A stretch of 64,000 nt of DNA, taken from Thecamonas trahens ATCC 50062. Lineage: Eukaryota; Protista; Apusomonadida. The translations under genes were made by a program, and so were the position numbers. Of this stretch, positions 2,367-8,946 are shown in pieces (position 1 is the stretch's first letter; every line of letters starts with the position of its first letter). The DNA lies in NCBI RefSeq assembly GCF_000142905.1, contig NW_013657674.1, positions 280,709 through 344,708 of the forward strand, given 5' to 3'. The notes under the pieces were generated by a model, which saw only the letters and a list, made by a program, of their open reading frames with translations, was not told where the DNA came from and made no database searches.

Positions 2367-5300
2367 TTACGCCGTCTGTGGCTGATGGTACCGCTCCACA
2401 AGCATCCTCGCCCGTGGGTTGAAGCCCGCGATAGCACCGGCCACTGCAAGCGGCCGCAGCGTGGTGTCGACCCGTGCATCGGCGGCGAGGAGGTCGGCAA
2501 TCTCCACGTGGCCACCCTTGCACGCGAGTTCAAACGCTGTGAGCGTGTCGCGCCCCGCGTTGACGTCGACCTCCGGCGAGTTCAGGAGAAGGCGGACAAT
2601 CTCGACGCTACCGCGCTCGGCGGCAACCTGAAGCGGGCAGAACATCCCGGCTGCCACCTCCGCAGGTGAGCCGCCGATTTGTCGCTCAAGCAGCCACCGG
2701 ACGACATCGACGTGGTCGCGGCAAACCGCAGTAAAGATCGGCGTCATGTTCTGGTCCACAGACGCCGACTCGGTGTCGATCTCGTGATCGCTGTCCACCA
2801 ACAGCTGCACCATCGCCAGCGACCCGCCCTCACATGCCGCATAGAACATGGTCCGGCCCTCCAGATCGCGGTGTGCCACGTCGAGCTCGCCCCTTGGCAC
2901 ACGCTGCAGAAACATCTGCACAACTTCGATGTGCTGGTTGAAGGCCGCTGCCCAGACTGGGACTCGCCCGGCCTGGTTTGCTGCGTTTGGATCTGCGCCG
3001 GCGGTCAGAAGCGCGTCCACAACTGCCACAGATCCATGGACACTCGCCAACATGAGTGCTGTGTCGCCGTCCGAGTCCTTCACGTCCAGCTCGGCGCCCG
3101 CCGCAACGAGCATGCACGCAAGCTCCTCCTTTTTCGCGAGAGTCGCAAGCCACATCGCGCTCAATCCATCCTCGTCGATGTGGTTGATGTTGGCTCCATG
3201 GGCAAGCAGGGCTTCTGCCACACGCACATCTTGCGGACTCTCAGCGTTCTGCGACATGAACAGCGGCGTGCGCTGGCTGCGGGACTCGGCGTCGACGGTG
3301 GCACCTGCATCAATAAGTGCCTTCACCATCTCCACGTGTCCCATCAAGGCTGCCTTGTGCAGCGGTGTCCGGCCGTCCTTGGTGGCGAGGTCGAGGTTGA
3401 GCTCCGCTGCGTGGTCCGACTCGAGCAGCGCGCGGACGACCTCGATCTCACCACTCTCCACCGCCACGTACAGCACCGAGCATCCGTTGGTGCTCCGCAC
3501 CCCGTTGACGCTGAGCTCGCCGACCACGCCGAGCTCTAGGATGAGCTTGACAATGTCGGTAGACTTATTGAGCGCGGCATGCCAAAGAGGCGTTCGGTTC
3601 TCCAAATCTGGCTCATCGAGCGAGCACCCGGCGTTGAGCGCAGCGCGGGCAATGTTTGTGCGCTTGTTCAGCGCAGCCAGAGCGAGGATGTTGAACCCAT
3701 CCTTGTCGGTCACGTGCACACTTGCACCCAGCTCGATCAGCGTCATCACGCACTCGGTCGCGCCCATCACCGTCGCCAGCAGGATCGGCGTCAAGCCGAG
3801 CTGGTTAACCGTGTTGACGCCGGCGCCAGCCTCCACCAGCGCCCGAATCGACCCGGCGTGCTTCCCGATCGCTGCACATGCTACCGGCGAGTCGCCGGTC
3901 TCGTCAAGCATGTTGACATCCATGCCAAACGCAATCAGCAGCCGCACCATCTCTTCCGACTGGCTAAGCGCCGCGCGATGGAGCGGCGTCCTCCCATCAT
4001 TTGCCCGCGCGTCGAGGTCAAACTCGCGCCCGCTCTCCACCAGCGCCCGCAACGTTGCCATCGACTTGCCCTCGACCGCCACGTACAAGACAGAGCATCC
4101 ATTTGACGTCCGCCGCGCGTTGACGTTAAGCTCGTCGCCCGGAAAACGGTCGAGCAAGAGCTGGACCACTTCAGAGTTGCCTTTGAGCGCCGCATACCAC
4201 AGCGGCGTGCGCCCGTCGTCATCTGCAGCGTCAACCGCTGCTCCAGCCTCAATGAGCAGACTCACAACCTGCGTGTTCCCAGCCTCGACAGCATGCGACA
4301 GCACCGACTGTCCTTTTGAGTTGCACATCTGAACGTTCGGACGAGGCGTCTGCCCCAGTGCGTTCCGAACCAGGAACAGATCGCCGCGCGTCGCTCCGCC
4401 CCACAGCAGCTCATCCGCGCCGTTGCCAAACTCAGGTGGCCGCGCAGGCGTCGCCACCGGCATCGACCTTCCAAAGGCGCGCCGAAGCAGTGCCTCGAGC
4501 GAGTCTGTCGAATCCTCGCTCGACTCGGGCGTGTCCGATCTCTCGTCAGCCTCTCGTGGCATCGCGCCAAAAGGCATCGGGTCCGGCATCGGCACCGCGC
4601 CCGGTACCGCGCCCGGTACCGCACCCGGCATCCCAACTGGCGCCATACCCGGCATCACGCCCGGCATCACGCCCGGCATTGCGCCCGGCATCGACGCTCC
4701 ATGCCCAAACGCGGCCGCCGCGTTTGCCACCATGCGCACAAACTCAGCAAAAGCGCCCCCGGGAGCAGATGGAGCAGCTCCGCCCGCATGACCCGGTCCG
4801 CGCGCAAAGTGGGTGGCATGCGGCTCCGGCAGCACAGGCTCTTCTTCGTCGTCGGACGAGGTAGAGTCAAGAACCTCGATGACCGGATTGCCAGGGTTGT
4901 AGCCGCGGCGACGCATACCCCCAGTGGTGCCTGATGGGGCGCCCCCCGACCAGCCGGGTGCCGACCTGGAAGCGCGTGCCGGCCTGGAAGTGCGTTTCGG
5001 CCTGAAAGCGTGCGGTGATGCCGGCGCTGGAGTCGGCGTTGGTGTTGACGCCGGCCCAGCTGCCGCCTGCGTTGTTGTGTCCAAATCGCGCCCAATGCGC
5101 AGAACGAGCCGTGGGTCGGGCAACTCGGCAAACTGAAACGCAAGCTTGGCGTCGTCAAACCGACCATGGTTGACAAGATAAAAGCCAAAGGCCTTGGCCA
5201 TCGACTCGACAAGGTCGGCGTTACCAAACTGCACCGCTGCGAGGCACGCCCTGCGGTACAGGTCGTCGACGAGGGGAAGCTCCTCCGGGAAAGAGCCGTG

Positions 5301-8300: not shown

Positions 8301-8946
8301 GCCGTACCATCACGCCCAATTGGTCGTCAGGAGGCGAGAACCGGACGTAGTCGTCGACCCGAGTGACCACGAACGAAAACGCGTCGTCAATGTTGCCACC
8401 AGGCACACGATTGTTGTCGTAAAAGTGGGCCCGGACTGCGTCAGCGATGACGGCCTCAGCCGTAGCGAGGTTGTCACGGTCGAGCGTCGCCGGCAACTCG
8501 AGGTACAATCGCGCCTCAGACCCTTCGGCCAGGATCGAGTGGAGACAGCTGCAAAAACGTCCAAAGACCAGCGCTTTGCGCGCCTCGTTGGCCGAGACTC
8601 CAATGAGGACCGGGAGGATCTCGATCTTGCCCGTTCCGGTGCCGACGAGCTCGCCAAGGCACGCGAGCTCGCGAATGCAGCTCAGGTCCATGCGGTTGTT
8701 GACAAAGCTCGGCGTTATCATGAGGACAACCACACCTCCGCGAGTGGCCAAGAGGGCATCAGCCTCGGAGTTTTGGGTGTCGACATCGCGATAGCCGACA
8801 GAGAGCCGGACAGGCGCGTTCGGCCGTGGCGTGCCGAGGTTGTTCGCCACTTGCGAGACAAGCGCAAAAGCCCAGTCGCCCACGCCCGGTTCAGGCTCGC
8901 CGCTATAGGTGAGCCAGACGTCAAACGCCGGGACAGTCGAGCTCAT
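2367..8946 (-). CDS. TIR + GBP/atlastin-family GTPase + helical/TPR-like region + ankyrin-repeat protein (~2,190 aa after correcting two 1-nt frameshifts near 7785 and 7005)
   Basis: Three overlapping ORFs (7291-8946, 6908-7735, 2367-7319) join in register. TIR motifs FDVWLTY, VVLMITPSF, CIREL, ILPV. GTPase motifs GDSRCGKS, HCTLG, FMDVEG, ICLRD. More than 15 ankyrin repeats (GRTPLHxAA type). Confidence 0.8.
4585..4692 (-). repeat. 12-bp coding minisatellite encoding (M/V)PG(A/V) tetrapeptides
   Basis: Repeated gcccggcatcac / gcccggtaccgc units; protein MPGAMPGVMPGVMPGMAPVGMPGAVPGAVPGAVP. Confidence 0.8.

What the first reader, a model, noticed from the sequence alone, without database searches (positions are those of the whole stretch)
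2367..8946. TIR-GBP/atlastin-helical-ankyrin fusion: an NLR-like layout with a dynamin-superfamily GTPase as the switch
Seen: an N-terminal TIR (CIREL retains the Glu) and a GB1/RHD3-type G domain. That domain has G1 GDSRCGKS including the in-cis Arg, a G2 Thr in HCTLG, G3 DVEG and G4 LRD. It is followed by a helical stalk, a TPR-like region, an MPGx linker and a long ankyrin array. The fusion is hidden in the ORF track by two frameshifts. Known: GBPs and atlastins dimerise in a GTP-dependent way. Inference: ligand binding by the ankyrin array could drive GTP-dependent assembly that activates the TIR.
Basis: partly seen in the sequence, partly recalled or inferred. Interest (0 to 1): 0.8.

Follow-up and report, generated by a model that had tools for sequence, protein, structure and literature searches.

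The report
Protist GBP-type GTPase with ankyrin array
A protist gene (earlier scan notes name Thecamonas trahens) joins a real GBP/atlastin-type GTPase to about 20 ankyrin repeats and to an N-terminal domain that is probably, but not provably, a TIR domain, giving an immune-receptor-like layout whose two-part versions I also found in other protists.

Summary
Window 2367-8946 (minus strand) holds one gene of about 2,190 codons. It is read in three frames because one base is missing at each of two places.

- **G domain: confirmed.** The middle part is a GB1/RHD3-type (GBP/atlastin) domain with all four GTP-binding motifs intact. hhalign against 89 protist GBP-like domains gives probability 99% and E 2e-18. 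The AlphaFold model has pLDDT 82 and matches atlastin, GBP1/2/5 and RNF112.
- **Ankyrin array and Pro/Gly/Ala linker: confirmed.** The array has about 19-20 repeats.
- **TIR: not proven.** Pfam, NCBIfam, PADLOC and PDB searches are blank, and the single-sequence fold failed (pLDDT 39). A collinear hhalign match to a TIR profile scores 17.3. Negative controls reach at most 12, and the weakest true TIRs score 26-29. The match puts Glu93 on the catalytic Glu. I put TIR at about 65-70%.
- **"TPR-like" region: unsupported.**
- **Frame breaks: best read as assembly errors.** All seven breaks found (six in this window, one in an HSP70 gene) are the same one-base-missing type.
- **Architecture relatives.** Other protists have an expressed TIR-GBP transcript, and GBP-ANK, GBP-TPR and GBP-TRAF proteins. 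I found no paper describing this class.
- **Context.** This is the only GBP-type domain found in the genome. It lies head-to-head with a TIR-STAND-LRR gene.
- **Earlier scan note.** The scan noted this same stretch once before (s1-753675), on the same DNA, not other DNA.

The parts
2367..8946 (-). Whole gene, about 2,190 codons in three frames (A, B, C) plus the stop codon at 2367-2369.
   Evidence: ORFs and translations. The codon-position GC pattern switches frame A->B->C at about 7790 and about 7000. There are no N runs inside the gene.
8413..8946 (-). N-terminal alpha/beta domain (residues 1 to about 178), a probable divergent TIR-like domain. Motifs: FDVWLTY (8905-8925), YRD (box-2-like), VVVLMITPSF, CIREL.
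   Evidence: Family and PDB sequence searches are blank. hhalign -glob against a 21-sequence TIR profile scores 17.3 (E 0.0025). None of 306 shuffles reaches it (max 12.1). None of 59 natural non-TIR segments reaches it (max 11.3). The weakest Pfam-positive TIRs, left out of the profile, score 26-29. The AF2 single-sequence model is unusable, pLDDT 39.
8668..8670 (-). Glu93 codon (in CIREL), aligned to the invariant TIR Glu.
   Evidence: hhalign alignments. The Glu column is invariant in the Thecamonas TIR alignment A2.
7957..8400 (-). Unassigned, mostly helical region (residues 183-330).
   Evidence: No family hits. Helices appear only in a low-confidence model.
7792..7956 (-). Low-complexity Ala/Gly/Pro/Ser spacer before the G domain.
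   Evidence: Translation.
7769..7770 (-). Frame break 1 (A->B). One base is missing near ttcac|tctgtc. Alternative reading: a 71-nt GT..AG phase-0 intron at 7751-7821.
   Evidence: Sequence and frame arithmetic. Frame B has no ATG upstream of 7735, yet the G-domain match starts before that ATG.
6792..7791 (-). GB1/RHD3-type (GBP/atlastin) large G domain, spanning both frame breaks.
   Evidence: The part after break 2 aligns with the last helices of the family's G domain and with the '..CMPRP..' motif of P0098.
7649..7672 (-). G1 / P-loop GDSRCGKS, with the in-cis Arg36.
   Evidence: G33, R36, G38, K39 and S40 lie on nearly invariant columns.
7523..7525 (-). G2 / switch I Thr82 (HCTLG).
   Evidence: Invariant column in alignments A1 and A3.
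7328..7339 (-). G3 DVEG.
   Evidence: D144, E146 and G147 are invariant.
7121..7126 (-). G4 Arg215-Asp216 (LRD).
   Evidence: D216 is invariant and R215 nearly invariant.
7002..7003 (-). Frame break 2 (B->C). One base is missing in or next to the C4 run of ccttccccgccg.
   Evidence: Conserved residues lie within about 30 nt on both sides, and there is no GT between them.
5079..6791 (-). About 570-residue region with no detectable relatives. The 'stalk / TPR-like' labels are unverified.
   Evidence: Blank in the word search, Pfam, PADLOC and NCBIfam and PDB. hhalign against the family's post-G region finds nothing beyond residue 69.
4413..5078 (-). 222-residue Ala/Pro/Gly-rich linker that stays in frame C. 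It holds MPG-type 12-nt tandem repeats at 4590-4697.
2370..4412 (-). Ankyrin array of about 19-20 repeats, with one old internal duplication of about 615 nt (77% identity over 70 nt).
   Evidence: Pfam Ank_2 E 1e-94 and Ank E 2e-74. Repeat count. Direct repeat.
9250..12377 (+). Context: a head-to-head neighbour gene, TIR_2 + STAND-type P-loop + LRR. Its ATG lies 303 bp from this gene's ATG.

Best explanation
This is one nuclear gene of a protist; earlier notes of this scan name Thecamonas trahens, which I did not verify. It encodes a cytosolic protein of about 2,190 residues. In order, the protein has:
- a divergent TIR-like alpha/beta domain;
- a helical spacer;
- a catalytically intact GBP/atlastin-type large GTPase;
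- a lineage-specific region of about 570 residues with no detectable relatives, whose fold was not determined;
- a disordered Pro/Gly/Ala linker;
- about 20 ankyrin repeats.

The two frame breaks are single-base under-calls in the assembly, so the gene is intact.

Proposed mechanism, which is inferred and not shown:
1. The ankyrin array binds a target, either a foreign protein or a modified self protein.
2. Binding releases or concentrates the protein.
3. The G domains then dimerise or oligomerise in the GTP-bound state, as GBPs and atlastins do through their G-domain interface with the in-cis P-loop arginine.
4. This brings the N-terminal domains together.
5. If those domains are TIRs, proximity builds the composite NAD+-cleaving site. 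The output is NAD+ depletion or a nucleotide signal.

The protein is therefore a functional analogue of a TIR-NLR, with a GBP-type GTPase in place of the STAND ATPase.
For: **Shown: one coding unit**
- Three frames share a continuous coding signal. There is no in-frame stop over 392 + 255 + 1,545 codons.
- Frame B has no ATG before its G-domain match begins.
- The G-domain match continues across break 2.

**Shown: G domain**
- phmmer against 1.8e9 proteins gives hits at E 4e-7 to 7e-4, and 6 of 7 carry Pfam GBP.
- A family profile hits GBP2/5/1 at 1e-19 and atlastins at 1e-11 in PDB.
- hhalign gives 99.05% and E 2e-18.
- All G1-G4 residues are conserved.
- The AF2 model has pLDDT 81.7 and matches atlastin, GBP and RNF112, TM up to 0.63.

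**Shown: ankyrin array**.

**Shown: breaks are probably artefacts**
- All 6 frame changes in the window, and one in an HSP70 paralogue, are the same 'one base missing' type.
- One of them sits inside a conserved cNMP-binding motif, at a T4G3 run.

**Suggestive: TIR**
- The collinear hhalign score of 17.3 lies above every shuffle (0 of 306) and every natural control (0 of 59). Glu93 falls on the invariant Glu.
- The score rose from 11.7 to 17.3 when the profile was broadened.

**Context**
- P0098 is UBA-TIR_2-GBP. It was assembled as an uninterrupted 3.3-kb transcript in four samples.
- GBP-ANK (P0039, P0044), GBP-TPR (P0102) and GBP-TRAF (P0075) proteins exist.
- The gene lies head-to-head with a TIR-STAND-LRR gene.
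Against: - No curated family model recognises the N-terminal domain, and PDB sequence search is blank.
- Its hhalign score is below that of the weakest Pfam-positive TIRs (17 against 26-29).
- hmmsearch with the small TIR profile did no better than shuffles.
- The single-sequence fold failed, and its Foldseek matches are generic alpha/beta folds.
- Pfam GBP does not hit the G domain directly.
- No orthologue was found anywhere, so conservation of the full architecture is untested.
- The ankyrin repeats show no hypervariable, recently homogenised pattern of the kind seen in some fungal and protist receptors.
- There are no expression data.
- The frame breaks could be real, which would make this a young pseudogene.
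Confidence: 0.5

Rival explanations
1. The gene is an intact GBP/atlastin-like large GTPase used for membrane, organelle or cytoskeleton work rather than for immunity. The ankyrin array is a docking module. The N-terminal alpha/beta domain is not a TIR, or is a non-catalytic adaptor.
For: - Atlastin is the best structural match of the G domain.
- Ankyrin arrays are general protein-docking modules.
- TIR identity is unproven.
- This is the only GBP-type G domain found in the genome, which could fit a housekeeping role.
Against: - No transmembrane or lipid-anchor signal is visible in the translation, and there is no CaaX at the C-terminus.
- No orthologues were found in 15 billion proteins, which is unusual for a housekeeping gene.
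- The N-terminal domain scores above all negative controls against TIR profiles.
- The gene shares a 303-bp divergent promoter region with a TIR-STAND-LRR gene.
- Relatives fuse this G domain to TIR_2, TRAF and TPR modules typical of immune signalling.
Confidence: 0.3
2. The gene is a recently inactivated pseudogene. The two one-base deletions are real, and the locus no longer makes the fusion protein.
For: - There are two frame breaks within about 770 nt of the G domain.
- The neighbouring TIR-STAND-LRR gene is also broken.
- Immune-type genes turn over quickly.
Against: - All 7 frame changes found are of the same one-base-missing type. They include one in a cNMP-binding motif and one in an HSP70 paralogue, which points to a systematic sequencing artefact.
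- There is no stop in 2,192 in-frame codons. By my own arithmetic from the base composition, not a tool result, about 2.8% of random codons at 63% GC would be stops, so the chance of 1,545 open codons is about 1e-19.
- The codon-position GC signal is intact throughout.
- All catalytic residues are kept.
Confidence: 0.13
3. The locus is an assembly chimaera or two to three adjacent genes, for example a TIR-like gene and a separate GBP-ANK gene that starts at ATG 7735.
For: - An ATG exists at 7735 in frame B, and another at 7319 in frame C.
- GBP-ANK proteins without a TIR exist elsewhere.
Against: - There is no N run or composition break inside the gene.
- The G-domain match starts upstream of ATG 7735 and continues across break 2.
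- The first 107 codons after ATG 7319 overlap frame-B coding sequence and are out of frame.
- Frame A would otherwise carry a 160-residue nonsense tail overlapping the G domain.
Confidence: 0.04

Closest known systems
Interferon-inducible guanylate-binding proteins (hGBP1/2/5)
   Same: - Both have the GB1/RHD3-type large G domain with GxxRxGKS (in-cis Arg), a switch-I Thr, DxEG and an RD-type G4.
- The family profile hits GBP2/5/1 at E 1e-19.
- Foldseek matches are at E about 1e-6.
- From established knowledge, GBPs act in cell-autonomous immunity through GTP-dependent dimerisation and polymerisation.
   Different: - Pfam GBP and GBP_C do not hit this protein.
- The helical part is unrelated at sequence level.
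- There is no CaaX box.
- It carries an extra N-terminal domain and a C-terminal ankyrin array, and is about 2,190 residues against about 590.
Atlastin / RHD3 / Sey1 and RNF112
   Same: - These give the best structural matches of the G-domain model: atlastin-1 at E 8e-8 and TM 0.63, RNF112 at E 3e-6.
- RNF112 (9jju) is also the best single-sequence PDB hit, aligned on G1, G3 and G4.
   Different: - The translation shows no transmembrane hairpin and no RING.
- Sequence profiles favour GBP over atlastin (1e-19 against 1e-11).
Protist GBP-like fusion proteins found here: P0098 (UBA-TIR_2-GBP), P0039 and P0044 (GBP-helical-ANK), P0102 (GBP-TPR), P0075 (GBP-zf-TRAF)
   Same: - The domain order matches the two halves of this gene: TIR N-terminal to the G domain, and repeats C-terminal to the helical part.
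- The G domains are homologous. BLASTP of P0098 against piece B gives E 1e-9, and hhalign gives 99%.
   Different: - None of them has all three parts.
- They belong to a family made up mainly of oomycete and other stramenopile sequences, at 23-30% identity to this G domain.
- The TIR of P0098 is Pfam-positive and shows no BLAST similarity to this N-terminus.
TIR-NB-ARC-LRR (TNL) receptors and other STAND NLRs; ROCO-type GTPase receptors
   Same: - All share the tripartite logic of N-terminal effector, central NTP switch and C-terminal repeat array.
- A true TIR-STAND-LRR gene sits next door.
- GTPase-centred candidate receptors (ROCO) are described in brown algae (PMC3341825, PMC11378527, listed).
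   Different: - There is no NB-ARC, NACHT or Roc-COR domain.
- The switch is a dynamin-superfamily G domain that works by nucleotide-dependent dimerisation, not a STAND wheel.
Animal GBP fusions to death-fold or adaptor domains
   Same: GBP G domains joined to immune adaptor modules are on record. TRADD-N fusions to AIG and GBP GTPases in invertebrates are reported in PMC8195603. Fish GBPs with FIIND-CARD I know only from memory; I did not check them here.
   Different: The partner domains differ (TRADD-N or CARD, not TIR), there is no repeat-array sensor, and the hosts are animals.

Membership tests
GB1/RHD3-type large GTPases (GBP/atlastin clade) | G1 P-loop GxxRxGKS with the in-cis arginine | tested here: met
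   GDSRCGKS at 7649-7672. G33, R36, G38, K39 and S40 lie on nearly invariant columns of the 40-sequence alignment.
GB1/RHD3-type large GTPases (GBP/atlastin clade) | G2 Thr, G3 DxEG and G4 RD in the right order and spacing | tested here: met
   T82, D144/E146/G147 and D216 are invariant, and R215 is nearly invariant.
GB1/RHD3-type large GTPases (GBP/atlastin clade) | Significant sequence relationship to recognised members | tested here: met
   phmmer E 4e-7 against 1.8e9 proteins, with 6 of 7 hits Pfam GBP-positive. hhalign 99.05%, E 2e-18.
GB1/RHD3-type large GTPases (GBP/atlastin clade) | Direct hit of the curated model (Pfam PF02263) above its cut-off | tested here: not met
   No hit even at E 10. 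PF02263 also finds nothing in the whole genome. The domain is split by two frame breaks and carries insertions of roughly 20 and 25 residues (between G1 and G2, and between G2 and G3), which lowers the score.
GB1/RHD3-type large GTPases (GBP/atlastin clade) | G-domain fold | tested here: met
   AF2 with a 40-sequence alignment: pLDDT 81.7, pTM 0.81. Foldseek top hits are atlastin-1/3, GBP1/2/5 and RNF112. The model leans on the homologues' alignment.
Canonical GBPs (vertebrate type) | GBP_C helical middle/effector domain and, in some members, a C-terminal CaaX | tested here: not met
   No Pfam hit on residues after the G domain. hhalign against the family's post-G region finds nothing beyond the last G-domain helices. 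The protein's C-terminal residues do not form a CaaX box.
GTPase activity and GTP-dependent dimerisation | Biochemical behaviour | not testable with these tools
   Inferred only from motif conservation.
TIR domain | Hit of curated TIR-type models (Pfam TIR, TIR_2 and related, NCBIfam, PADLOC) | tested here: not met
   No hits at E up to 10. The TIR_2 genome scan finds 29 places, but not this one.
TIR domain | Collinear profile similarity over the whole domain, above controls | tested here: inconclusive
   hhalign -glob scores 17.3 (E 0.0025). No shuffle (0 of 306) and no natural control (0 of 59) reaches it. Left-out true TIRs score 26-121. The small-profile hmmsearch is not significant.
TIR domain | Catalytic Glu at the alphaC position | tested here: inconclusive
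   Glu93 (CIREL) aligns with the invariant Glu in every hhalign alignment. The underlying match is weak.
TIR domain | Flavodoxin-like five-strand beta/alpha fold | tested here: inconclusive
   The AF2 single-sequence model has pLDDT 39. Its secondary-structure order mostly fits beta/alpha alternation: betaA is missing and the alphaB position is modelled as a strand. The model is unusable, and its Foldseek matches are generic.
STAND NLR | NB-ARC or NACHT ATPase | tested here: not met
   There are no such Pfam hits in any piece. The protein is only an architectural analogue.
Ankyrin repeat proteins | Tandem 33-residue ANK repeats | tested here: met
   Ank_2 E 1e-94 and Ank E 2e-74. About 19-20 repeats.
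TPR proteins | TPR repeats in the region before the linker | tested here: not met
   No TPR family hits residues 1-700 of piece C at E up to 10.

The most novel reading that the evidence does not exclude
GBP-type large GTPases form an unrecognised, recurrent switch module of NLR-like innate immune receptors in protists. In this view the G domain is combined with effector or adaptor heads (TIR, TRAF, UBA) and with repeat sensors (ANK, TPR). The gene studied here would be the first complete three-part example. It would link the origin of GBP-based cell-autonomous immunity to TIR/NAD+ signalling before animals arose.
Probability: 0.35. Interest if true: 0.78.

Novelty: new variant of a known kind. 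Interest (0 to 1): 0.6.

Why it matters
GBPs, TIR enzymes and NLRs are three pillars of cell-autonomous immunity, and they are usually treated as separate systems. A protein that wires a GBP-type GTPase between a TIR-like head and a repeat sensor would show that dimerising dynamin-superfamily GTPases can replace STAND ATPases as the assembly switch. The organism is a bacterivorous protist and, from memory and if the name in the earlier scan notes holds, an apusomonad close to the animal-fungal lineage.

The claim is directly testable. The tests are NADase activity of residues 1-180 with and without the E93A change, GTP-dependent dimerisation of the G domain, and forced-proximity cell death.

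The practical lesson is that this assembly carries frequent one-base under-calls. These split long genes, so ORF-based or Pfam-based surveys of it will miss fusions like this one.

Tried and rejected
**Searches that came back blank**
- Pfam, NCBIfam and PADLOC on all non-ankyrin pieces.
- Word search for relatives of the helical region and of the N-terminus.
- Paralogue searches in the window's own genome with piece B, the N-terminus, PF02263 and the A1 profile. Each found only itself.
- PDB sequence search of the N-terminus and of the helical region.

**Structure attempts on the N-terminus**
- AF2 single-sequence folding of residues 1-392 failed (pLDDT 39).
- Its Foldseek matches (RFC, vWA, Legionella effectors; TM 0.15-0.22) are not evidence either way.
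- I did not fold the N-terminus with a borrowed TIR alignment, because that test would be circular.
- The ESM Atlas was busy at every attempt.

**Other leads**
- hmmsearch with the 8-sequence TIR profile was not significant.
- The contigs of the weak hits P0002, P0003 and P0006 gave no architecture information.
- An intron at junction 2 is rejected, because conserved residues lie within about 30 nt on both sides and there is no GT between them.
- Other frames in the linker at 4900-5100 are rejected, because they hold stops or nonsense.
- Programmed -1 frameshifting is rejected: by inspection of the sequence at the breaks I saw no slippery heptamer.
- Independent confirmation of the organism name failed, because the exact HSP70 protein is not in the collection.
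- Literature searches found no description of a TIR-GBP architecture.

**How the pieces were handled**
The three pieces were searched apart, by reference.
- A joined string with X at each break was used only inside scripts, for coordinate book-keeping and repeat counting.

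
Full report
**What is at the locus**

The window has 63% GC and two N-run gaps. Neither gap lies inside the finding. On the minus strand, three ORFs abut or overlap: 8946-7291, 7735-6908 and 7319-2367.

The codon-position GC pattern shows which frame is coding, because the second codon position is GC-poor. By this measure frame A codes from 8946 to about 7800, frame B from about 7790 to about 7000, and frame C from about 7000 to 2370. I therefore worked with three pieces, always by reference:
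- A = 8946-7771 (392 aa);
- B = 7768-7004 (255 aa);
- C = 7001-2367 (1,545 aa).

A joined string with X at each break was used only in scripts, for coordinates.

**The frame breaks**

Both breaks move the frame in the same direction, which corresponds to one base missing.

*Break 2 (7002-7003).*
- It lies in or next to a C4 run.
- Family-conserved residues lie within about 30 nt on both sides. The F-x-S-hydrophobic...C-x-P motif before the break matches the same motif in P0098. The last G-domain helices follow the break.
- There is no GT between these conserved stretches, so an intron is excluded.

*Break 1 (about 7770).*
- It can be read as a missing base. It can also be read as a 71-nt GT..AG phase-0 intron at 7751-7821.
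- Either way, frame A joins frame B.

*Frame B cannot be an independent gene.* Its only ATG (7735) lies inside the stretch that aligns with the family.

*The same defect recurs.*
- A scan of the window found six same-strand coding frame changes, all of the 'one base missing' kind.
- One of them cuts a cNMP-binding motif at a T4G3 run.
- One HSP70 paralogue elsewhere in the genome shows the same defect.
- Seven of seven in one direction is what systematic under-calling gives, not random decay.
- An earlier follow-up on this genome reached the same view for another gene (s1-744703).

I put an intact gene at about 80-85% and a young pseudogene at about 13%.

**The G domain**

- Pfam does not see it. 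PF02263 finds nothing in the whole assembly.
- phmmer of piece B against 1.8 billion representatives gives seven hits at E 4e-7 to 7e-4. Six of them carry Pfam GBP above its cut-off.
- A profile of B plus these hits finds GBP2/5/1 at about 1e-19, atlastins at about 1e-11 and Sey1 at 2e-4 among solved structures.
- B alone finds RNF112 (9jju), aligned on G1, G3 and G4.
- A word search seeded with the hit P0004 returned 95 protist GBP-like proteins, mainly oomycetes and other stramenopiles.
- hhalign of B against 89 of their G domains, with B left out, gives probability 99.05%, E 2e-18 and 207 aligned columns.
- In a 40-sequence alignment, T82, G84, D144, E146, G147, G149 and D216 are invariant. 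G33, R36, G38, K39, S40 and R215 are nearly invariant, and B has them all.
- AF2 with that alignment gives pLDDT 81.7 and pTM 0.81.
- Foldseek ranks atlastin-1/3, GBP1/2/5 and RNF112 first, at E 8e-8 to 1e-5 and TM up to 0.63.

This is a divergent but catalytically complete GB1/RHD3-type G domain. It is the only one I could find in this genome.

**The N-terminal domain**

*Evidence against a TIR, or blank.*
- There is nothing in Pfam, NCBIfam, PADLOC or PDB sequences.
- It has no relatives by word search.
- It has no paralogues.
- The TIR_2 model finds 29 places in the genome, including the neighbouring gene, but not this one.
- AF2 without an alignment failed (pLDDT 39), so its fold matches are meaningless.

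*What remains is a profile comparison.*
- Against 8 Thecamonas TIR domains, hhalign gives a collinear global alignment with score 11.7. Two of 321 shuffles reach that score.
- Against a broader 21-sequence TIR profile, the score rises to 17.3 (E 0.0025). None of 306 shuffles reaches it; the highest is 12.1.
- None of 59 natural non-TIR segments from this window reaches it either; the highest is 11.3.
- The alignment pairs FDVWLTY with the betaA motif, VVVLMITPSF with betaC, Glu93 with the invariant Glu, and ILPVLIG with betaD.
- As positive controls, the three most divergent Pfam-positive TIRs, each left out of the profile, score 26-29.

The domain therefore sits between the negative and positive ranges. 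I rate TIR homology at about 65-70%. A recent preprint on TeTIR domains shows that active TIR-like domains can escape the standard models (10.64898/2026.09.21.753143).

**The rest of the protein**

- Residues 183-390 of piece A and the first about 640 residues of piece C have no detectable relatives or family hits. The 'stalk' and 'TPR-like' labels are therefore unverified.
- The 222-residue linker is Ala/Pro/Gly-rich and stays in frame C. It contains 12-nt tandem repeats that encode the MPG-type units.
- The ankyrin array is unambiguous and has about 19-20 repeats.
- The array holds only one old internal duplication and no homogenised hypervariable repeats.

**Context and relatives of the design**

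- The gene's ATG lies 303 bp from the ATG of a divergently transcribed gene. That gene has TIR_2, a STAND-type P-loop and, after its own one-base break, LRRs.
- Several of the 95 GBP-like proteins carry extra domains:
  - P0098 is UBA-TIR_2-GBP-helical. It was assembled as an uninterrupted 3.3-kb transcript in four samples.
  - P0039 and P0044 are GBP-helical-ANK.
  - P0102 is GBP plus many TPRs.
  - P0075 is GBP plus TRAF zinc fingers.
  - P0096 is GBP plus a cNMP-binding domain.
- Both halves of this gene's design therefore exist elsewhere, in the same order. I saw no other protein with all three parts.
- The literature I could search has no description of a TIR-GBP architecture. The nearest statements are TRADD-N fusions to AIG and GBP GTPases in invertebrates (PMC8195603) and GTPase-centred conflict systems of other families (PMC7159879).

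**Mechanism**

The following are shown: the domain order, the intact GTPase motifs and the ankyrin array.

The following is inferred from established knowledge of GBPs and atlastins (GTP-dependent G-domain dimerisation with an in-cis arginine) and of TIR enzymes (activity needs TIR-TIR contact):
1. Target binding by the ankyrin array permits GTP-dependent pairing or polymerisation.
2. That clusters the N-terminal domains.
3. Clustering switches on NAD+ cleavage or adaptor signalling.

The main rival is a non-immune large GTPase with a docking array.

**Verdict**

- The TIR is the weak link, and 'TPR-like' should be dropped.
- This is a new variant of known kinds (GBP-family GTPase, NLR-like logic), not a new category.
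- The organism name comes from earlier notes of this scan. I could not confirm it independently.

Noticed in passing
window 9250-12377 (+): The head-to-head neighbour is a TNL-like gene. It has TIR_2 (aa 173-265, E 4e-11), an AAA_16/AAA_22 P-loop (aa 398-498) and, after a one-base frame change near 11100, LRR_6/LRR_4 repeats. It shares a 303-bp divergent intergenic region with the GBP gene.
   Followed up: partly
window about 7770, 7003, 11100, 36950, 39190, 57990; also G000:C17:110128-111893: Every same-strand coding frame change found is of the 'one base missing' type: six in this window and one in an HSP70 paralogue. The change at 39190 cuts a cNMP-binding motif at TTTTGGG. This looks like systematic single-base under-calling in the assembly, which would split many long genes in ORF-based readings.
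   Followed up: partly
window 29239-40237 (+): A very long gene of more than 3,600 codons is split into three ORFs by two of these one-base breaks. It has coiled-coil sequence around 36900-37200 and a cNMP-binding motif near 39190.
   Followed up: no
window 510-2063 (-): A gene of the PhoPQ-activated pathogenicity-related family (PF10142, E 1e-74) lies directly downstream of the GBP gene, on the same strand.
   Followed up: no
G000, 29 places: The genome holds at least 28 credible TIR_2 matches, most of them in open frames of 900-2,000 aa. Several are near-identical copies on small scaffolds. The hit at C35:316099-316353 looks like a Ras-like GTPase and is probably a false positive.
   Followed up: partly
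P0102, P0075, P0096, P0100: The protist GBP-like G domain also occurs fused to long TPR arrays, TRAF zinc fingers, a cNMP-binding domain and a PX domain. This repertoire of GBP fusions was not described in the papers I searched.
   Followed up: partly
L015 (activated-sludge metagenome contig, 1623-2171): P0003 is the hit most like this gene around the P-loop (GSGRCGKSWF). It comes from a low-GC, repeat-rich eukaryotic contig with no visible TIR or ANK in its 2.2 kb.
   Followed up: partly
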